The notes below the pieces were generated by a model. It searched no databases. It had not been told where the DNA came from and saw nothing but the letters and a program-made list of their open reading frames with translations. Made by a program: the position numbers and the translations under genes. From the IMG/VR virus record IMGVR_UViG_3300035182_002586, positions 124,001 through 188,000 of that record: a stretch of 64,000 bases of DNA; one strand, given 5' to 3'. This document shows, in pieces, positions 26,728 through 51,515 of this stretch (its first letter is position 1; every line of letters starts with the position of its first letter).

Positions 26728-26807
26728 CTACGACCCCATTTTCATCTTGGGGTCTCTCTCGCCGGTGTACACAGTACCGGCCGACACGACGCAGTGGACC
26801 CCCAACA

Positions 26808-26847
26808 GGCACCCCCCTCGGACGCGCAAGCGCCCATCCAAGGTGCC
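26808..26847 (+). promoter_or_regulatory. 5'-leader copy of the ncRNA module (candidate autoregulatory protein-binding site)
   Basis: ggcacc-ccCTCGGA-cgc-GCAA-gcg-CCCATCCaa-ggtgcc, ending 7 nt before ATG 26855. Confidence 0.75.
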
Positions 26848-26854
26848 GGGACGA

Positions 26855-28873
26855 ATGAACATGAACGCGAACAACCCCAACGAGAAGCTCGGTCCCGCCG
26901 AGAGGATCATCCAGACGGTCCTCGCCTACTCCGACCACATGGTCCACAACCGCCCGGGCGTCCTCACGAAGGACCCGGGTTCCGCGATCGGCGTCAAGTG
27001 GACGTACGTGACGCACAAGGTCGAGCCGAAGCCGGGCGCTGCTCCGGTCGCGGCCGCGCCGGCTGCCCCGAGGGTCAAGCGTGAGAAGGGCGCCAAGCGC
27101 GACCCGAACGCGCCCAAGGTCCCGAAGGTCAAGCGTCCGCCGATCCCGGACGGCATCAAGGTCGTCTACCAGCTCACGAAGGCGGGCAAGAAGACCATCC
27201 GCACGCGTCTCGGCGTCCTCCAGGACGACGGCAAGACGGTGAAGGCCGACAACGGCGTCACTATCGGCGAGTACCGTCCGGCGGGGCTCTTCCCGGAGGT
27301 CGCGGCCTGGATGTACAAGCAGGTCGCGGACGTCTGGAAGATCGACAACGAGTTCGCGGCGCGGTGGGCAAGCTACGCGTTCGGCCAGGAGCACCGTGAC
27401 CTCAAGGTCATCCTGGCGGCGTTCATGCTCGTCCAGAGCCGCAAGGGCGATCCGGTCCTCGACGGAGGCAAGGTCGCGTTCCTCGACGAGGACTACCGCG
27501 ACGTGGGTGAGGCGATGATGCTCATCCGCGAGAAGGGGCAGAAGGACCTCAACCCGAAGCTCCTGCTCCGCATCCGTGACCTGCTCACGATCCCGGCCGT
27601 CGCCGAGGTCAACCGCGAGCTGGGTTTCGGCCGCAGCGCCCGCAAGCCGTTCTACGGCCGGTGGGAGAAGGCGGTCGAGAAGTGGCTGCGGCACCGCGAG
27701 GAGAACCCGAAGCTCCTCCAGGGCCTCGTGAAGGCGGGCTTCCGCTCGACCGTCATGGAGCTGGCGTGCGCCATCGGTTACAAGCCGGAGACCCCGAAGT
27801 TCTTCGAGATCCTCCGGTGGAAGCAGGCGCAGGCGAAGGATGGGCGCCGGGCCCTCGACATCGGCAAGGCCGTCACGGCTGCCGAGACGTGGGAGGGGTT
27901 CACCGAGCAGCAGATCTGCGAGACGATCGTTCGTACCAAGCCCAACTACAAGCGCGTCATCGGGCTCATCCCGAAGGCCGTGGGGCTCACGCGGGCCATC
28001 GTCGCGGCGACCATCGAGGCTGGCGGGTTCTCGAACAAGGACCTGATCCAGTTCACGCCGACCCTGGAGGAGCTGGGCCTCCTCAACGTGCAGGACGTGC
28101 GTGAGCGGTGGGAGAAGGCGATGCGCGAGGCCGACGACATGCGTGCAGCGAACATCGCGCTGCGCGTCAAGTCCAAGGCGGTCGCGGAGAAGCTCCAGGA
28201 CGCGGCCGATACCGCCATCAAGGCGGCGGTGGCCGAGGTCGTGAAGGGCCTCCGGATCTACGTCGTCGTCGACCGTTCGGGCTCCATGGATGGTGCGATC
28301 GAGGCGGCCAAGAGCCACATCGGACGCTTCCTCCAGGGCTTCCCGGCAGACAAGCTGCACGTCTCCATCTTCAACACCGTGGGCCGCGAGGTGCAGATCA
28401 AGCACGCCTCGGCTGCGGGCGTCGAGAACGCCTTCCGGGGCATCCAGGCGGAGGGTGGGACGAACCATGCGGATGGCGTCAAGGTGCTCTCGAAGTACAA
28501 GCCGGCCGACGACGAGGACGTGCTGATGATCTTCATCGGCGACGAGGAGGACTCGCACCAGCACTTCGTGCCGACGGTCCAGGCTTCTGGACTCCGGCCG
28601 ATGGCCTTCGGCCTCGTGCGTGTCCTCGGTCGGCAGAGTCACGGGCGTGGCATGGCGGTGCGCAACACCGCGCAACTCCTCGGCATCCCGTGCTTCCAGA
28701 TCGACGAGAAGACGTTTGCGGACCCGTACGCGATCCCGCGCACGATCCGCAACCTCGTCGCGGCGACCCCGGTGGGGGCCGTCACGACCGCTGCTCCGCA
28801 GCGTGTCCGTGAGACCCTCGTGGACACGATCCTCAAGACGGACGTGCTCAAGAAGCCGGCCTGGGCCGCCTAG
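26855..28873 (+). CDS. Ro60-like protein (TROVE-like helical region plus C-terminal vWA)
   Basis: vWA MIDAS motifs DRSGSM, GGT and GDEED are clear; the TROVE-like assignment of the basic helical N-terminal region is inferred from architecture. Confidence 0.75.
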   Translation: MNMNANNPNEKLGPAERIIQTVLAYSDHMVHNRPGVLTKDPGSAIGVKWTYVTHKVEPKPGAAPVAAAPAAPRVKREKGAKRDPNAPKVPKVKRPPIPDGIKVVYQLTKAGKKTIRTRLGVLQDDGKTVKADNGVTIGEYRPAGLFPEVAAWMYKQVADVWKIDNEFAARWASYAFGQEHRDLKVILAAFMLVQSRKGDPVLDGGKVAFLDEDYRDVGEAMMLIREKGQKDLNPKLLLRIRDLLTIPAVAEVNRELGFGRSARKPFYGRWEKAVEKWLRHREENPKLLQGLVKAGFRSTVMELACAIGYKPETPKFFEILRWKQAQAKDGRRALDIGKAVTAAETWEGFTEQQICETIVRTKPNYKRVIGLIPKAVGLTRAIVAATIEAGGFSNKDLIQFTPTLEELGLLNVQDVRERWEKAMREADDMRAANIALRVKSKAVAEKLQDAADTAIKAAVAEVVKGLRIYVVVDRSGSMDGAIEAAKSHIGRFLQGFPADKLHVSIFNTVGREVQIKHASAAGVENAFRGIQAEGGTNHADGVKVLSKYKPADDEDVLMIFIGDEEDSHQHFVPTVQASGLRPMAFGLVRVLGRQSHGRGMAVRNTAQLLGIPCFQIDEKTFADPYAIPRTIRNLVAATPVGAVTTAAPQRVRETLVDTILKTDVLKKPAWAA

Positions 28874-28890: not shown

Positions 28891-29211
28891 ATGGCGCCCA
28901 CCATGCCCGATGATCCCCACATCTCGTTCTCGTTCGTGAGAATCGACGAAGACCTCGTTCGTCGCGTGGCCGAGCGCTGCGGGGCGAACGAGGCCGACGT
29001 TTGGGCCTACCTCAGGTCCGAATTTCAGCAGGACGACACGCTCCTGCACGCCTTCGAGTACTTCGGGGTCTTCCCCACGGGGAAGCACTACTACGAGCCG
29101 GGGAAACCCCGCCCCGATGATCCGCTTTCGCTGTCGTCGATGGGCTGCCGTGTCGTACACGCGGGCTACCCCAACAGCCTCGACTGCCGGCACACGAAAC
29201 CCACGAGGTAG
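28891..29211 (+). CDS. hypothetical protein
   Basis: ORF preceded by GGTGTA. Confidence 0.55.
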   Translation: MAPTMPDDPHISFSFVRIDEDLVRRVAERCGANEADVWAYLRSEFQQDDTLLHAFEYFGVFPTGKHYYEPGKPRPDDPLSLSSMGCRVVHAGYPNSLDCRHTKPTR

Positions 29212-29215
29212 GACC

Positions 29216-30214
29216 ATGAGCTGGAAGGACTTGCTACAGACGGAGGGTGAGACCGTCATCGCCCCTTGGGTCGAGGGCAAAGTTCTTCGCTCGGTCGATC
29301 GCACGTGGATGATCGAGGGGCGCCGTCCCCCGGAGCCCGGTTGGCACCGCTTCACCATCACGGCCCGCAAGGCCCGGTGGGAGAAGGCGGTCGACCCGCA
29401 GCCGGAGCTGCTCGTCGATGTCCAGCGTGGCTACCTGGTCGGTGACCGCCTCGTCCGGAACGACGCTCGTGTGGACCCGGACCCCGCGCTCATCACCGAG
29501 CAGTCGGAGCCCATCCATCTCGTCGAGCCCGGACTCGACCGCTTCGTACCCATCATCGCGGGCCGTGGCTTCGAGGACGGGCCCCTGATCTACCAGGGCC
29601 AGGACATGCCCTCGGGCCCCGAGGAGAGCGTCCTCCAGGCGTTCCTGGAGCGCCACATCAGCGTCAACGGCATTCCCGGCGTCACCCCCGCCCTCGACGC
29701 GGCTTTCCGCATGGAGAGCTGGCAGAGGTTGGAGGCCGACCGTCGAAGGGCTGAGATCGAGCGTCGACTCCGCGAGGAGGAAGAGAAGCGGCAGCGCGAA
29801 GAGCGCCGGCAGCAGCTCGTCCAGCAGCTCGGGGACGGTGCGGGACGCCGCCAAATGGCTCTCGTCGACTTCGCGGCCGCTGCTACGGCAGCTCTCGCGG
29901 TTGGAGGCGCGACGTACCTCGACCACCGGCGCTCTGCCGTCCGGGGGGAGATGGTGGTTCGGTTCCGGGTTCAGAACCGGAGCTTCGAGTGCACCTGCGA
30001 GGAGAAGACGCTCGCCATCGTCGACGCGGGTATCTGCCTCATCAACCACAACACCGGCGAGAAGGGCGACACCTACTTCACGCTGGAGTCGCTGCCTGCT
30101 GTCATCGCTGAGGCGGTCCGCAAGCACAAGCTCGTCGTCTTCCGTCATGTCGGGGGTGGTGATCAGCACCACGACGACCACGACGATCGGGATGACGAAG
30201 ACGAGTTCGACTGA
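29216..30214 (+). CDS. coiled-coil protein with a possible E2 (UBC)-like C-terminal domain
   Basis: DAGICL...FTLESLPAVIAEA resembles the E2 GxICL active-site segment; lies within the E1/Ubl/JAB cluster. Confidence 0.55.
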   Translation: MSWKDLLQTEGETVIAPWVEGKVLRSVDRTWMIEGRRPPEPGWHRFTITARKARWEKAVDPQPELLVDVQRGYLVGDRLVRNDARVDPDPALITEQSEPIHLVEPGLDRFVPIIAGRGFEDGPLIYQGQDMPSGPEESVLQAFLERHISVNGIPGVTPALDAAFRMESWQRLEADRRRAEIERRLREEEEKRQREERRQQLVQQLGDGAGRRQMALVDFAAAATAALAVGGATYLDHRRSAVRGEMVVRFRVQNRSFECTCEEKTLAIVDAGICLINHNTGEKGDTYFTLESLPAVIAEAVRKHKLVVFRHVGGGDQHHDDHDDRDDEDEFD

Positions 30215-30240
30215 CTCTTCGGTGTAGAAGGAAGCTCGTC

Positions 30241-30648
30241 ATGATGGAAGCAGGCGTCGTCGTCGACATCCACGGAGAGGCCCTCCACTGGCACTTGCCG
30301 GAGGGTCGATCCGGGGGGTCGCTCCCGGACCACGTGGCCAAGCTCCCCGCGTCCGAGGAAGCGTTCCGCAAGGCGAACCTCTGGTACGTCTTCTGGGACA
30401 ACCGGGACAGCATCAAGGGGTTCGCCCACAGCCATCCCGGCGGTGGGGTCCCGGGCCCCTCGTACACGGACGTGACGACCTTCGCCGCTATCGAGGATGC
30501 CCTCGGGCAGCGCCTCGACTGGTGGATCACGAGCGACCAGGCGGTCGTCGTGTGCAGGTGGGCGGGCCCTCATCGGCTCACCTACCAGGTGGAGCGCCTC
30601 GCGGAAGACCCCTCGTGGGTTGCCGAGCTGAGACGCCTCAGCAAGTGA
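30241..30648 (+). CDS. JAB/MPN+ metalloprotease
   Basis: N-terminal E, then GFAHSHPGGGVPGPSYTD (HxH-x7-S-x2-D). Confidence 0.88.
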   Translation: MMEAGVVVDIHGEALHWHLPEGRSGGSLPDHVAKLPASEEAFRKANLWYVFWDNRDSIKGFAHSHPGGGVPGPSYTDVTTFAAIEDALGQRLDWWITSDQAVVVCRWAGPHRLTYQVERLAEDPSWVAELRRLSK

Positions 30649-30696
30649 CTGGCCTCCGGGCCCAACGAATCAAAGTGGAAGGGAGGGCTAACGCCC

Positions 30697-30957
30697 ATGA
30701 TCAACGCGAACGAAGCAATGGTGAACGTGACGTGGAACCGGCAGAATGGGAACCTCGTGGACCCGGTGCCGCTCGACTCGGCGGATGGCGACGTCCGCCA
30801 GTGGATCACGGAGGCGGTGCGCGCGGGTAGCGTGCCCGGTATCCCGGCCGACGGGGCTGCGGACTTCCACGACTACGTGATCGACCGGTTCGCGCCGACC
30901 GACGCGCGCCCGTACAACCTCATCTCGGTCCGCCCGAAGACCCCCTTCGGCGCGTGA
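30697..30957 (+). CDS. ubiquitin-like (beta-grasp) protein
   Basis: 86 aa, beta-beta-alpha-beta pattern, C-terminus RPKTPFGA with a penultimate Gly; lies between JAB and E1. Confidence 0.7.
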   Translation: MINANEAMVNVTWNRQNGNLVDPVPLDSADGDVRQWITEAVRAGSVPGIPADGAADFHDYVIDRFAPTDARPYNLISVRPKTPFGA

Positions 30958-30969
30958 GAAGGGAGGCTC

Positions 30970-31311
30970 ATGCTCAACGAGAACGTGCATGAGCCTCCGC
31001 TCCACGTCCGGCACGCGACCTTGGAGCGCCTGTCTTCGGACAGCGAGTTCAAGGTCCACTGCCCTGCGTGTACGGACGGCCTACTCATCGTGAGCCGTAA
31101 CCTCGATCGCGTCATCTCGTCGCTGGATCGCTGCATCTCTTGTGGGCAGGTCATCGTCTACGAAGACGAGACGATCGCGCACGAGAAGGTGCGTCGAATG
31201 CCCGAAGAGGCTGTGCGGGAGTACGCCGAGGGGTACGCAAAGGTCCTCGAAGGGAAGGCCCCCAAGAAGACCTCCCTGTGGGACCGTCTGCTGGGAGACG
31301 AAGACCTCTAG
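30970..31311 (+). CDS. zinc-ribbon protein
   Basis: CPAC...CISC; ggagg RBS. Confidence 0.65.
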   Translation: MLNENVHEPPLHVRHATLERLSSDSEFKVHCPACTDGLLIVSRNLDRVISSLDRCISCGQVIVYEDETIAHEKVRRMPEEAVREYAEGYAKVLEGKAPKKTSLWDRLLGDEDL

Positions 31312-31328
31312 CCGGTGTACAGGGGAAC

Positions 31329-31904
31329 ATGAAGAACATCGTCGTCATCGGCGTCGGAGCCCTCGGGTCTCACGTCGTCCAGTTCCTCCGCAGCGCGGGC
31401 GCGACGATCAAGGTCATCGACTTCGATCGCGTCGAGCAGAAAAACGTCCTCTCGCAGTTCCACGGCAAGCCGAACGTCGGCAAGTCCAAGGTCATGGCCC
31501 TCCAGCAGACGATGCAGTTCCTCTGGGGGGTGAAGATCGAGGTCGTGCCGCACAAGCTCGTCACCGACAACGCCGAGAACGTCATCGGCAAGCCGGACCT
31601 CATCATTGACTGCCTCGACAACGGGGCCGCCCGCCGCGTCGTGCAGACGTACGCTCGGGCCAAGAACATCCCGTGTCTCCACGGGGCGCTCGCGGCCGAC
31701 GGTGGCTTCGCCCGCGTCGTGTGGGACGAGAAGTTCGTCATCGACGACGAGGGCACCGGAGCCGGCGCGACCTGCGAGGACGGCGAGCATCTCCCCTTCA
31801 TCAGCCTCGCGTCCGCGCACATCGCGCGCGCCGCACAGTCCTTCCTCAAGGACGGCAAGAAGGGCGGCTTCGAAATCAACCCCGGCGGTTCGACCGGGAC
31901 TTGA
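31329..31904 (+). CDS. ThiF/E1-like adenylyltransferase
   Basis: GVGALGS, IDFDRVEQKN, GKSK, DCLDN, candidate catalytic Cys in ATCED. Confidence 0.9.
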   Translation: MKNIVVIGVGALGSHVVQFLRSAGATIKVIDFDRVEQKNVLSQFHGKPNVGKSKVMALQQTMQFLWGVKIEVVPHKLVTDNAENVIGKPDLIIDCLDNGAARRVVQTYARAKNIPCLHGALAADGGFARVVWDEKFVIDDEGTGAGATCEDGEHLPFISLASAHIARAAQSFLKDGKKGGFEINPGGSTGT

Positions 31905-31949: not shown

Positions 31950-32459
31950 ATGCTGCGAACTTGTACGAAGTGTCTGGGTTCGAAGCCTGAGAAGTCTTTC
32001 GCAAAGACCTCCTCTGGGTACCGTCGTAGGGTCTGCCACACGTGCCAGAGCCGCGTAAAACGTGGTCAAGCCGATCCGACTCTTCGACGGGACTACCAAC
32101 GCAAACACCGCGAAGAGAACCCCCACATCTACGTCCTTGTTGATTGTCGGATGTCCGATCGTCGCAACAAGAGAACGGGTAACGACCTAGACACACTCTT
32201 CGTTGAGGCAGCCCTCAGCAACGGGTGTCAGTACTGTGGGGATACATCGCTCCGTATGACCCTGGACCGTATCGACAACACTCGTGCCCACGCGAAAGAC
32301 AACGTGGTTCCGTGTTGCCTCCGGTGTAACTACATCCGTGGGTCGATGCCCTACGAAGCCTGGCTTCATATGGTCCCAACGGTACGCGAGGCGAGAGAAC
32401 AGGGACTCTTTGGGGACTGGCGCTCGCAGCCTCTCAACAAGAGGCCGAAAGACCCTTGA
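31950..32459 (+). CDS. HNH-type endonuclease
   Basis: CQYCG...LDRIDN..AH...NVVPCC..CN; paralog of the 25935 gene. Confidence 0.88.
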   Translation: MLRTCTKCLGSKPEKSFAKTSSGYRRRVCHTCQSRVKRGQADPTLRRDYQRKHREENPHIYVLVDCRMSDRRNKRTGNDLDTLFVEAALSNGCQYCGDTSLRMTLDRIDNTRAHAKDNVVPCCLRCNYIRGSMPYEAWLHMVPTVREAREQGLFGDWRSQPLNKRPKDP

Positions 32460-32562: not shown

Positions 32563-32699
32563 GGGGAATACTGAGGGATGGTCCCTCACCGGAACGTAAA
32601 TCTGGCGCTAACGCACCTCGGCATCGCACCTCGCACCCGCAAGGGCGCACATCGCGGTTCCTACACGCTTTCTTGGTTCGAATCCAAGGTTCCCCACCA
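32563..32699 (+). ncRNA. tRNA-mimic RNA A1 (Tyr-like GTA) with module in the variable loop
   Basis: ggggaat/gttcccc+ACCA, D arm, ccgga-acgtaaa-tctgg, module 32629-32650, T arm. Confidence 0.8.
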
Positions 32700-32841
32700 C
32701 TCGCGACCATTAGACTGACCTCACACGCATATATGGGTTCGAGTCCCATTCCGCCCCCTCGGGGCAGATCGCCCAACTGGTAGGGCACTCGTCAGAAAAA
32801 CGAGCTTGCAAAAGCAACCAGGTCTGTCACTCGGACGCGAG
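32700..32841 (+). ncRNA. YrlA-like circularly permuted tRNA-mimic RNA B1 (GAA loop)
   Basis: Terminal stem ctcgcg/cgcgag; order is T arm, looped acceptor, D arm, anticodon arm. Confidence 0.8.
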
Positions 32842-32879
32842 TAACTTTTTTCTCTCAGCCACGACTCAGGACACGTTAC

Positions 32880-33021
32880 GCCCGTTCACAGAGGATCGGT
32901 TCCTCGCCTCCCTTCCACGGAGGAGCGAAAGCTCTAACTCCAGATCTGCCCCTCGCATCCGCAAGGACGCACCCCGCAGTTCTCACAAGACATCTCGGTT
33001 CGACTCCGAGGACGGGCTCCA
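32880..33021 (+). ncRNA. tRNA-mimic RNA A2 (Gly-like TCC)
   Basis: gcccgtt/gacgggc+TCCA, cctcc-cttccac-ggagg, module 32951-32972. Confidence 0.8.
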
Positions 33022-33057
33022 CACTCTCTCGCTCTTTGCAGCTCTCTCGACACTTTC

Positions 33058-33182
33058 GGCGGATCGGGGCTAGGGCCCCCACTTTCCCTCATACGGAACG
33101 ATCCGGCTCGTCTCCTCGCACCCGCAAGGGCGCACCCCCGACGAGCCCACAAGCCTGCCTGGTTCGAATCCAGGATCCGCCT
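33058..33182 (+). ncRNA. tRNA-mimic RNA A3 (Met-like CAT)
   Basis: ggcggat/atccgcc, ttcc-ctcatac-ggaa, module 33114-33135. Confidence 0.78.
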
Positions 33183-33184
33183 CT

Positions 33185-33312
33185 GGGGCGACCATCACGC
33201 ACTGCTCACACGCAATATCGTCCAATGGTAGGACGGTGGCCTTAAAAGCCGCTTGTACAGGTTCGAGTCCTGTTACTGCAACCAAAGTCCAGCAGTGCAC
33301 CTCGGACGCCCC
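33185..33312 (+). ncRNA. RNA C1: module strands clamping a complete tRNA-like unit (TAA, 33211-33284)
   Basis: ggggcg/cgcccc and gcactgct/agcagtgc stems around a cloverleaf ending ACCA. Confidence 0.78.
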
Positions 33313-33337
33313 TAACTTCTCTCGTCACGTCACTCTT

Positions 33338-33471
33338 GGAGGATCATAGAGGGTCGGTCCCTCACCTGCCATTTCAAGCAGGAGCCTAACAGCTCCCAGG
33401 ACTGCACCTCGCATCCGCAAGGACGCACCAAGCAGTTCTCACACGCCCCGGTTCGACTCCGGAATCCTCCG
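33338..33471 (+). ncRNA. tRNA-mimic RNA A4 (8-nt loop catttcaa)
   Basis: ggaggat/atcctcc, module 33407-33428, T arm. Confidence 0.78.
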
Positions 33472-33504
33472 CCGCCCCGCAAGGGGTTGTTACTGACACG
33501 AATG

Positions 33505-33644
33505 TGGCCGTCACAGGGGATCGGTTCCCCACCTGCTTGCAACGCAGGAGCCTAACAGCTCTTCCAGGATCGCACCTCGCACCCGCAAGGGAGCACTCAG
33601 CGGTTCTCACACGCCAACCGGTTCGACTCCGGGACGGCCAGCCA
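33505..33644 (+). ncRNA. tRNA-mimic RNA A5 (Cys-like GCA)
   Basis: tggccgt/acggcca+GCCA, cctgc-ttgcaac-gcagg, module 33575-33596. Confidence 0.8.
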
Positions 33645-33677
33645 CACTAGTTGCAGGGTTTGCTCTCGTCACGCATA

Positions 33678-33816
33678 TGCCCGTCACAGGGGATCGGTTC
33701 CCCACCTGCAATTGGAGCAGGAGCCTAAACAGCTCCCAGGATCACACCTCGCACCCGCAAGGGCGCATCCCGTGGTTCTCACACGCAAATCCGGTTCGAC
33801 TCCGGGACGGGCGACC
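33678..33816 (+). ncRNA. tRNA-mimic RNA A6 (Gln-like TTG)
   Basis: tgcccgt/acgggcg, cctgc-aattgga-gcagg, module 33747-33768. Confidence 0.8.
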
Positions 33817-33960
33817 GCTTCGCGACCATCAGACCGACCTCACAAGCAATGTTGGTTCGAATCCAACCTCCCCCTCCATTTACGGGGGAGTAGCCTAACT
33901 GGCAAAGGCACTCGTCAAATAAACGAGCAATCAACCAGGTCTGTCACTCGGACGCGAAGC
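33817..33960 (+). ncRNA. YrlA-like circularly permuted tRNA-mimic RNA B2 (AAT loop)
   Basis: gcttcgcg/cgcgaagc terminal stem; same order as B1. Confidence 0.8.
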
Positions 33961-33999
33961 TACTACTCCAGCCGGACCCCCACATAGGGTCCGGCTCAT

Positions 34000-51159: not shown

Positions 51160-51515
51160 GGGAGCGCCCCGGTTTCGACGGGGGAAGGAAGTTTTCGCTA
51201 GCGTGTAGGCCCGCGCTCGTAGGGCCTCAAAAGATTCGAGCCGAAACAAACGCCAACGACAACGGCACCGTCATCACCGCTCTCAAGGCGGCTGCGTGAC
51301 CGATCCCGCCCCAAGGTAGTCCTCGTAGGGGCATATGGGATCGTCAAACACTAGGGCTGGCCAAAGCCTCGGGCTCCCGGGGGTCAGGCGAGACAAGCAG
51401 GGAAGCTAGGTCGCGGCCAAATCTGCGAACCCCGTCGAGGGGGCAAGCTCGAATACGCACGTAGAAAGCGACGACAGAGATCTCTCGGACGCGGGTTCGA
51501 CTCCCGCCGCTTCCA
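51160..51515 (+). ncRNA. ssrA: tmRNA; tag (A)ANDNGTVITALKAAA* at 51252-51299
   Basis: gggagcg/cgcttcc acceptor with G3:U70, GGTTTCGAC, GGAC-GCGGGTTCGACTCCCGC, ANDN...AAA tag. Confidence 0.95.

What the first reader, a model, noticed from the sequence alone, without database searches (positions are those of the whole stretch)
26808..26857. The same RNA module sits in the 5' leader of the Ro60-like gene, suggesting autoregulation
Seen: ggcacc-cc-CUC-GG-A-CGC-GCAA-GCG-C-CC-AUCCAA-ggugcc ends 7 nt before ATG 26855, downstream of a GGTGTA promoter motif at 26764. It combines the GCAA cap of type A with the GG:CC pair of types B and C, and it lies about 5.7 kb from the array. This is independent sequence evidence tying this protein to the ncRNAs. 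Inference: free protein binds its own leader over the ribosome-binding region and represses translation until titrated by the ncRNAs.
Basis: partly seen in the sequence, partly recalled or inferred. Interest (0 to 1): 0.85.

Follow-up and report, generated by a model that had tools for sequence, protein, structure and literature searches.

The report
ncRNA module copy guarding Ro-like gene
A 40-base hairpin just ahead of a huge phage's Ro60-like gene is a true copy of the structured element carried by the phage's nearby tRNA-like small RNAs. It sits on the ribosome-binding site, so it most likely lets the protein limit its own synthesis, although no binding has been tested.

Summary
Window 26808-26847 folds as basal helix, 5' loop ending in CUC, a 6-bp stem with an A.C mismatch, a GCAA cap, a 3' loop starting with A, and basal helix again. 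It ends 7 nt before ATG 26855.

Two covariance models were built without this sequence. One used the six array hairpins of the window. The other used 49 hairpins from other phages. Each recovers the six array copies plus this leader (about 30 bits, E about 1e-6) and nothing else in 128 kb.

The gene product (672 aa) is a remote Ro60-like protein. Its fold matches TROVE+vWA, but Pfam TROVE is not hit. It is conserved in huge phages.

Module arrays lie a few kb downstream of the gene, on the same strand, in at least 40 related loci. In 30 of 113 distinct homologous leaders a CUCG-hairpin sits at -47..-29 (4.5 expected). Its stems covary and its basal helix touches the Shine-Dalgarno.

In the window the SD-like AGGUG lies inside the basal helix. 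A translational operator that mimics the ncRNA ligand is the best reading. Binding, repression and titration by the ncRNAs are inferred, not shown. The binder could also be another protein of the conserved cassette.

The parts
26764..26770 (+). GGTGTAC promoter-like motif upstream of the leader
   Evidence: GGTGTAM occurs 26 times against 7.3 expected, 21 of them on the + strand, often 10-30 nt before starts or tRNAs. The same motif lies upstream in many homologous leaders. No sigma-70-like promoter or terminator lies between tRNA-Ser and the gene.
26808..26813 (+). Basal (outer) helix, 5' strand GGCACC
   Evidence: Pairs with 26842-26847 in the MFE fold. The equivalent helix covaries in arrays and in leaders.
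26814..26819 (+). 5' internal loop CCCCUC (conserved CUC)
   Evidence: CUCG is invariant in 49 of 49 array modules from other phages and in the six window copies.
26820..26835 (+). Inner hairpin GGACGC-GCAA-GCGCCC (G:C, G:C, A.C mismatch, three pairs, GNRA cap)
   Evidence: The stem is nearly identical to the terminal stems of the type B/C RNAs.
26836..26841 (+). 3' internal loop AUCCAA (conserved first A)
   Evidence: A follows the closing C in 23 of 32 leader hairpins and in most array modules.
26842..26847 (+). Basal helix 3' strand GGUGCC. SD-like AGGUG lies at 26841-26845, 9 nt before the ATG.
   Evidence: Sequence. It occupies the same position as GGAG in homologous leaders, where the basal helix abuts or overlaps the SD.
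26855..28873 (+). Ro60-like (TROVE-like helical repeat + vWA) protein gene, 672 aa
   Evidence: VWA_2 hit. Top Foldseek hits are phage phiLo Ro60/TROVE and Xenopus Ro over 530-570 columns. TROVE clusters dominate the language-model neighbours. More than 2000 homologs are found, many on contigs of 200-660 kb, and the related loci in IMG/VR are huge viral contigs. Choosing ATG 26855 gives the same hairpin-to-start spacing as in homologs.
32620..33779 (+). Six type A module hairpins (32620-32661, 32942-32983, 33105-33147, 33398-33439, 33566-33607, 33738-33779), each in the variable region of a tRNA-shaped RNA
32699..32844 (+). Type B YrlA-like RNA whose 5'/3' terminal stem is the module opened at the loop
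   Evidence: Fold with z -4.1. Weak Rfam YrlA match at 32732-32786.
33186..33315 (+). Type C: module-type closing stem that encloses tRNA-Leu(taa)
33818..33961 (+). Second type B YrlA-like RNA
   Evidence: Fold with z -4.9.
29117..31904 (+). Conserved cassette between the gene and the array: unknown ~330-365 aa protein, JAB-like, ThiF/E1-like
   Evidence: tblastn finds them in 129, 110 and 95 of 139 loci. Pfam results. The unknown protein has no informative match.

Best explanation
The hairpin at 26808-26847 is a cis-acting translational operator that mimics the protein-binding module of the phage's Y-RNA-like/tRNA-like ncRNAs.

Shown:
- It belongs to the same structured RNA family as the array hairpins.
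- It lies in the 5' untranslated leader of the Ro60-like gene.
- Its basal helix contains the SD-like AGGUG, 9 nt before ATG 26855.
- An equivalent CUCG-hairpin sits at the same distance from the start codon in about a quarter of distinct homologous leaders.

Inferred:
- The Ro60-like protein recognises the CUC/A internal loop and the adjacent G:C-closed stem.
- When it exceeds its ncRNA partners, it binds its own leader, clamps the basal helix over the ribosome-binding site and blocks 30S loading.
- The nine ncRNA copies compete for the protein and relieve repression, matching protein output to ncRNA supply.
- In homologs the next cassette gene follows directly, or overlaps in one locus, so the operator may gate the first genes of the cassette.
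For: Family membership:
- R1 gives 30.3 bits and R2 gives 30.9 bits. The leader is the only non-array hit in the window.
- It has the same fold as the six array copies.

The module is a real structured RNA:
- CUCG is invariant.
- 11 of 12 pairs show compensatory changes across 49 copies from other phages.

Link to the gene:
- All 109 R2 hits in 114 related loci are on the gene's strand.
- They are either arrays, mostly 2.5-9 kb downstream of the gene, or the gene's own leader in L037, L068, L074, L006, L004 and L107. The one exception is a weak partial hit in L048 (17.1 bits, E 0.27) about 340 nt upstream of the gene.

Leader conservation:
- 30 of 113 distinct leaders have a CUCG-hairpin starting at -47..-29, against 4.5 expected (P about 2e-15).
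- 29 of 107 fall in that one 19-nt bin, against 1-8 in any other bin.
- There are 26 distinct stems. The consensus is AACUC-G..C-A and the hairpin end is mostly at -20.
- The basal helix abuts or overlaps GGAG.

Mimicry within genomes:
- The leader 9-mer equals the 3' strands of the three type B/C RNAs in the window.
- An 8-mer is shared between the leader and an array module in L052/L054.

The protein is Ro-like in fold. In the YrlA-like RNAs the module occupies the 5'/3' terminal stem, where Ro binds canonical Y RNAs (PMC4201824).
Against: - No binding or expression data exist.
- The protein does not hit Pfam TROVE in any of 31 homologs, and the TM-scores to Ro are only 0.3-0.43.
- The module lacks the known Ro-binding motifs GGUCCGA and GNCGAAN0-1G (PMC4201824).
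- About 73% of distinct homologous leaders lack the element. Some have an HNH gene or other motifs instead.
- The array-derived model scores many of the leader hairpins only at noise level, 10-16 bits. The leader class is therefore diverged and is supported mainly by position and by the CUCG core.
- The transcription start is not mapped.
- A conserved unknown protein in the same cassette could be the binder.
Confidence: 0.5

Rival explanations
1. The leader is an operator, but the factor that binds the module is not the Ro60-like protein. It would be another product of the conserved cassette (the unknown ~330-365 aa protein, or the JAB/ThiF pair) or a host factor. The leader would then place the first cassette gene under that factor's control.
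For: The unknown protein is present in 129 of 139 loci and follows the Ro-like gene within 0-100 nt in the loci inspected, overlapping it in L026. The Ro-like assignment is remote. The module lacks canonical Ro-binding motifs (PMC4201824).
Against: Autoregulatory operators usually sit on the binder's own mRNA. Only the Ro-like gene's leader carries the module. Ro-family proteins are the known partners of adjacent tRNA-like ncRNAs (PMC4201824, PMC12135203). The unknown protein has no RNA-binding signature.
Confidence: 0.15
2. The leader module is an mRNA stability or processing element rather than a repressor site. It would be a 5' stem-loop, with or without bound protein, that protects the message. 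Alternatively it would mark a cleavage site shared with ncRNA maturation, possibly releasing a mini ncRNA from the leader.
For: In several homologs the module begins only 3-20 nt after the promoter-like GGTGTA motif, near the predicted 5' end. Y RNA genes are known to lie directly upstream of phage Ro60 genes (PMC12135203).
Against: A generic stabiliser would not need the conserved CUC/A loops or the fixed -20 spacing to the ATG. The basal helix overlaps the SD, which is costly unless translation control is the point. No terminator or second promoter separates the hairpin from the gene.
Confidence: 0.15
3. A protein-independent SD-sequestering hairpin acts as a constitutive damper or thermosensor. 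It would resemble the array module only through shared ancestry by local duplication.
For: The hairpin alone (-21 kcal/mol) already buries AGGUG.
Against: The loop nucleotides and the closing G:C are conserved while both helices covary across about 26 distinct leader stems. In many homologs the basal helix is only 2-4 bp and could not sequester the SD unaided.
Confidence: 0.08
4. Chance resemblance, or a recent non-functional duplicate of an array hairpin.
For: High G+C sequence forms hairpins easily. The thermodynamic z-score is only -1.5 to -2.2.
Against: Two independent covariance models give E about 1e-6, with an 14-18 bit gap to the next hit. There are orthologous leader hits in phages whose protein is about 60% identical, including a compensatory change in L037. 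Positional enrichment has P about 2e-15.
Confidence: 0.02

Closest known systems
Ro60 (Rsr)-Y RNA ribonucleoproteins, including bacterial and phage YrlA RNAs and Thermus phage phiLo Ro60 with Yrl1/Yrl2
   Same: A TROVE-like + vWA protein is encoded next to ncRNAs with tRNA-like domains. In the type B/C RNAs the conserved element lies in the stem formed by the 5' and 3' ends, as in Y RNAs. A phage setting is already known (PMC4201824, PMC12135203).
   Different: The protein is not recognised by Pfam TROVE and carries an extra N-terminal beta domain. The RNA motif is CUCG plus a stem, not GGUCCGA or GNCGAA. Most copies sit in the variable region of tRNA-shaped RNAs arranged in an array. A copy lies on the gene's own ribosome-binding site. 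No report of this for any Ro60 was found in the library.
Translational autoregulation by molecular mimicry: E. coli thrS operator (tRNA-Thr anticodon-arm mimic) and ribosomal protein operons such as L1, S8 and L20 (from my own knowledge)
   Same: An RNA-binding protein's primary RNA ligand is copied into the leader of its own mRNA at or next to the SD. The free ligand competes with the operator.
   Different: Here the ligand is a family of phage ncRNAs of unknown function, the protein is Ro-like, and binding is untested.
CsrA/RsmA with CsrB/CsrC/RsmY/RsmZ decoy sRNAs (from my own knowledge)
   Same: A protein that occludes SD regions is titrated by ncRNAs carrying the same binding motif. CsrA also represses its own translation.
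   Different: Csr decoys carry many GGA sites on one RNA. Here each ncRNA carries one structured module, and several ncRNAs are encoded in tandem. No wider regulon is seen, since the module occurs at no other leader in the window.
Phage coat-protein operators (MS2, PP7, Q-beta replicase operator hairpins) (from my own knowledge)
   Same: A phage protein binds a small hairpin with specific unpaired bases at a ribosome-binding site to repress translation.
   Different: Those repress another gene rather than the binder's own, and no decoy ncRNAs are involved.

Membership tests
Huge-phage CUCG module (array hairpin family defined here: alignments A2/A3, models R1/R2) | Scores well above noise with a covariance model that excludes it | tested here: met
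   R1 gives 30.3 bits (E 1.4e-6), next hit 12.7 bits. R2 gives 30.9 bits (E 1.4e-6), next hit 16.2 bits.
Huge-phage CUCG module | Architecture: basal helix, 5' loop ending CUC, G:C-closed 5-6 bp stem, tetraloop, 3' loop starting with A, basal helix | tested here: met
   The MFE fold is identical in layout to the six array copies. The loops are 6 nt instead of 5 nt, and the A.C mismatch at pair 3 is shared with the window's array copies.
Huge-phage CUCG module | Embedded in a tRNA-like ncRNA and followed by UCU-yACAm and a T arm | tested here: not met
   The leader copy stands alone and is followed by GGGACGA-ATG. It is therefore a module copy, not a copy of the whole ncRNA.
Y RNA / YrlA (Rfam RF02553) | Reaches the Rfam gathering score | tested here: not met
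   No YrlA hit at the leader. The best YrlA hit in the region is 26.5 bits against a gathering score of 69, at 32732-32786 in the array.
Y RNA / YrlA | Ro-binding motif GGUCCGA (animals) or GNCGAAN0-1G (bacteria) | tested here: not met
   The leader has CUCGGACGC and the arrays have CUCGCA. The known motifs are as given in PMC4201824.
Y RNA / YrlA | Encoded next to a Ro60 ortholog | tested here: inconclusive
   It is adjacent to a protein that is Ro-like only by fold.
Ro60/TROVE proteins | Pfam TROVE (PF05731) domain | tested here: not met
   No TROVE hit in the window protein or in 30 homologs at E up to 1. A profile search against PDB sequences finds only vWA proteins.
Ro60/TROVE proteins | Helical-repeat domain followed by a vWA domain, with the Ro60 fold | tested here: inconclusive
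   The AF2 model has pLDDT 79. The top Foldseek PDB hits are 9kop, 1yvr, 1yvp, 2i91 and 9l5y (E 2e-7 to 1e-5, 530-570 columns), but TM is only 0.3-0.43. More than 60 of 100 language-model neighbours are TROVE clusters.
Ro60/TROVE proteins | Binds the adjacent ncRNAs | not testable with these tools
   Requires EMSA or co-purification.
Autoregulatory translational operators (ligand mimicry type) | The operator resembles the regulator's primary RNA ligand | tested here: met
   This holds provided the protein binds the module.
Autoregulatory translational operators (ligand mimicry type) | The operator overlaps or abuts the ribosome-binding site of the regulator's own mRNA | tested here: met
   AGGUG at 26841-26845 lies inside the basal helix. 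In homologs the hairpin ends near -20 and the helix touches GGAG.
Autoregulatory translational operators (ligand mimicry type) | The protein binds the operator and lowers translation, and the free ligand relieves this | not testable with these tools
   Needs reporter, toeprint and binding assays.

The most novel reading that the evidence does not exclude
A previously undescribed huge-phage ribonucleoprotein system in which:
- a very divergent Ro60-like protein partners with arrays of tRNA-shaped and YrlA-like ncRNAs through a new CUCG internal-loop module;
- the protein measures the supply of those ncRNAs by binding a mimic of the module on its own ribosome-binding site.

This would be the first translational autoregulation reported for any TROVE-family protein, with Y-like RNAs acting as anti-repressors.
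Probability: 0.4. Interest if true: 0.8.

Novelty: new variant of a known kind. Interest (0 to 1): 0.72.

Why it matters
Ro60-Y RNA particles are found from bacteria to humans, but how cells or phages balance the protein against its RNAs is not known. This locus gives a concrete and testable case with three components: a small operator, a defined RNA motif with strong covariation, and a protein family present in thousands of huge-phage contigs.

It also defines a new structured RNA family that is absent from Rfam. It links that family to a conserved cassette (Ro-like, unknown protein, JAB, ThiF) next to very large phage tRNA sets. This points to a phage system that acts on tRNA or translation during infection.

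Tried and rejected
- Literal pattern searches (CTCGGA...CC, GGCACC...GGTGCC) were uninformative, because chance expectation was similar to the observed counts.
- Hairpin stability is not by itself significant.
- Rfam has no family for the leader.
- Sequence searches of the protein against PDB and Pfam give only vWA. PHROGs gives a weak 'RNA-binding protein' hit.
- No close phage genome exists in GenBank phages.
- The single-protein scan of genome contigs returned only one locus, which spent that cap.
- My 'strict' Python hairpin grammar had too high a background to be useful. It was replaced by covariance models and a positional test.
- The array-derived model does not lift most homologous leaders above noise.
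- Terminator or attenuator reading: rejected, because there is no T-run and no terminator call.
- K-turn, loop E or known Ro-site identity: rejected on sequence.
- CUCGGACGC in the tmRNA (51484) is ordinary tmRNA 3' sequence and is unrelated.
- The neighbouring unknown protein gave only chance-level matches.
Full report
**What is in the sequence**

The window is a high-G+C stretch of a huge phage. It carries 53 tRNA genes and a tmRNA. It is identical to IMG/VR contig UViG_3300035182_002586 (L082). Its protein is recorded on a 620-kb contig. GenBank phages hold no close relative.

At 26808-26847 the sequence reads as follows:
- basal helix 5' strand GGCACC
- 5' loop CCCCUC
- inner stem GGACGC
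- cap GCAA
- inner stem GCGCCC
- 3' loop AUCCAA
- basal helix 3' strand GGUGCC

Seven nucleotides follow, then ATG 26855. GGTGTAC lies at 26764. The first array hairpin is at 32620.

**Is it more than chance?**

Folding energy alone is not remarkable (z -1.5 to -2.2). The architecture, however, is identical to that of six hairpins in the array at 32620-33779.

- Model R1 was built from those six copies only. It finds the leader as the single additional hit in both strands of the window, at 30.3 bits (E 1.4e-6). The next hit is at 12.7 bits.
- Model R2 was built from 49 module copies found in other phages, with no window sequence. It gives the same picture: six array copies, the leader at 30.9 bits, and the next hit at 16.2 bits.

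**The module family**

Across the 49 copies from other phages, CUCG is invariant. Eleven of 12 predicted pairs show compensatory changes. This is therefore a real structured RNA.

In the window the module occurs in three settings:
- In type A it is a capped hairpin in the variable region of tRNA-shaped RNAs that ARAGORN does not call.
- In the two YrlA-like RNAs the same module is formed by the 5' and 3' ends of the RNA, opened where the tetraloop would be. A weak Rfam YrlA hit supports the YrlA-like label.
- The stem that encloses tRNA-Leu(taa) has the same opened form.

The leader's inner stem, with its 9-mer CUCGGACGC, matches these terminal stems.

**The protein**

The ORF 26855-28873 (672 aa) hits only VWA_2 in Pfam and nothing in PDB by sequence. 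It has more than 2000 homologs at 55-66% identity. Many are on contigs of 200-660 kb, and the IMG/VR scan places relatives on huge viral contigs.

- An AlphaFold2 model from a 31-sequence alignment has pLDDT 79.
- Its best PDB matches are the phage phiLo Ro60/TROVE structure and Xenopus Ro, aligned over 530-570 columns (E 2e-7 to 1e-5). TM-scores are low, at 0.3-0.43.
- TROVE clusters dominate its language-model neighbours.
- Pfam TROVE is not hit in any of 31 members.

I therefore call it a remote Ro60-like protein. It has a TROVE-like helical domain, a vWA domain and an extra N-terminal beta domain. I do not call it a demonstrated Ro60 ortholog.

**Link between gene and RNAs**

R2 was searched over 114 distinct related loci (1.45 Mb, both strands) and gave 109 hits. 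All are on the strand of the gene. They are arrays, mostly 2.5-9 kb downstream of it, in at least 40 loci, or hits in the gene's own leader in L037, L068, L074, L006, L004 and L107. The one exception is a weak partial hit in L048 (17.1 bits, E 0.27) about 340 nt upstream of the gene.

Between the gene and the array lies a conserved cassette:
- an unknown ~330-365 aa protein, present in 129 of 139 loci
- a JAB-like protein, present in 110
- a ThiF/E1-like protein, present in 95

I located the start codon in each locus and printed the leaders. Many read AACUCG, then a hairpin of varying sequence, then CA, then a short helix and GGAG.

The counts are as follows:
- 30 of 113 distinct leaders have a CUCG-hairpin beginning at -47..-29. 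The expectation from the loci-wide rate under the same definition is 4.5 (Poisson P about 2e-15).
- 29 of 107 leaders fall in that one 19-nt bin, against 1-8 in every other bin out to -400.
- There are 26 distinct inner stems, with all four Watson-Crick pair types at positions 2-5.
- The nucleotide after the closing C is A in 23 of 32 hairpins.
- The 3' end of the hairpin is mostly at -20.

MFE folds show the same two-helix, two-loop layout, with the basal helix abutting or overlapping the SD. L037, whose protein is about 61% identical, has CCGU-AACUC-GGACUC-GCAA-GAGCCC-AUCAC-ACGG followed directly by AGGAG. It differs from the window's stem by a compensatory G:C to U:A change.

Two caveats apply. 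The array-derived model scores many of the other leader hairpins only at noise level. About three quarters of leaders lack the element. Some of these have an HNH endonuclease gene inserted directly upstream, and others carry different conserved motifs.

**Position relative to translation signals**

With ATG 26855 the hairpin-to-start spacing equals that of the homologs. With ATG 26861 it does not. The position held by GGAG in homologs is held in the window by GGUG, as part of AGGUG at 26841-26845. It lies wholly inside the 6-bp G+C-rich basal helix.

No terminator or sigma-70-like promoter lies between the upstream tRNA-Ser and the gene. GGTGTAM is strongly enriched and strand-biased in the window, at 26 occurrences against 7.3 expected. 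It recurs upstream of many homologous leaders. This fits a phage promoter element, so the hairpin would be in the transcript's 5' leader. That placement is an inference, because no 5' ends are mapped.

**Mechanism**

The best-supported reading is a translational operator that mimics the ncRNA module.
- Shown: family membership, location on the ribosome-binding site, fixed spacing, conservation with covariation, and conserved synteny of the gene with module arrays.
- Inferred: that the Ro-like protein binds the CUC/A loop and the adjacent stem, that binding blocks initiation, and that the ncRNAs compete.

Rivals, with my estimates:
- A different binder from the cassette or the host (0.15).
- A stability or processing element, or a leader-derived mini ncRNA (0.15).
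- A protein-independent SD-sequestering hairpin (0.08).
- Chance (0.02).

**Comparison with known systems**

It works like the ThrRS/thrS operator and the ribosomal-protein operators, where a ligand mimic sits at the SD. It also resembles CsrA with its decoy sRNAs. These comparisons rest on my own knowledge.

It resembles Ro60-Y RNA systems in gene-RNA adjacency, in tRNA-like domains and in the terminal-stem location of the conserved element (PMC4201824, PMC12135203). It fails the sequence-level membership tests for YrlA, for the known Ro-binding motifs and for Pfam TROVE.

A full-text search found no report of Ro60 regulating its own mRNA. That library is incomplete.

**Verdict**

The feature is real and conserved. 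I rate it a new variant of known kinds: Ro-like ribonucleoprotein combined with autoregulatory ligand mimicry. The mechanism awaits binding and reporter tests.

Noticed in passing
window 33336-33810 (units at about 33336-33475, 33504-33645, 33677-33810): Type A array units fold as tRNA-shaped RNAs. Each has an acceptor-like stem, a D-like hairpin, an anticodon-like arm with a 7-nt loop, an extra hairpin plus the CUCG module in the variable region, and a T arm. ARAGORN and Rfam do not call them.
   Followed up: partly
window 33186-33315: A standard tRNA-Leu(taa) (33211-33284) is enclosed by a Y-RNA-like closing stem that carries the module's ACCUC/GG-A-CGCC features.
   Followed up: partly
window 29117-31904 and homologous loci: A conserved cassette lies after the Ro-like gene: an unknown ~330-365 aa protein (129 of 139 loci, overlapping the upstream stop in L026), a JAB-like protein (110 loci) and a ThiF/E1-like protein (95 loci). 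The ncRNA array follows.
   Followed up: partly
window, 26 sites including 15956, 26764, 31314, 32544, 35594, 42604, 43946, 54708: GGTGTA(A/C) is enriched 3.5-fold, with 21 of 26 sites on the + strand, often 10-30 nt before start codons or tRNAs. It is also found upstream of homologous genes in other phages. It is a likely phage promoter element.
   Followed up: partly
L027, L043, L046, L049, L076, L089, L090, L100, L105, L115 (20-30 nt before the homolog's ATG): A second leader class: a hairpin of variable sequence followed by the conserved AGAUCGGAU(GG) just before the start codon. Its meaning is unknown.
   Followed up: no
L001, L062, L069, L072, L075, L109, L124 (leaders): A third leader class with repeated UUUUCACGAA boxes around GRGUACAAGGG. 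It may be the promoter or operator set of a different phage clade.
   Followed up: no
L011, L018, L030, L038, L066, L077, L093, L102, L112, L127 (upstream of the homolog); window 31950-32459: HNH or endonuclease VII-type genes are inserted directly upstream of the Ro-like gene in several phages, replacing the leader. One lies just before the array in the window.
   Followed up: partly
window 26747-26854: The reading frame of the gene stays open upstream to TTG 26747 and runs through the hairpin. Alignment with homologs shows that the conserved N-terminus begins near ATG 26855, so this extension is not coding.
   Followed up: yes
window 51484-51492: The 9-mer CUCGGACGC also occurs near the 3' end of the tmRNA. 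It is followed directly by the T-arm-like sequence, as in ordinary tmRNAs. I judged it unrelated to the module.
   Followed up: partly
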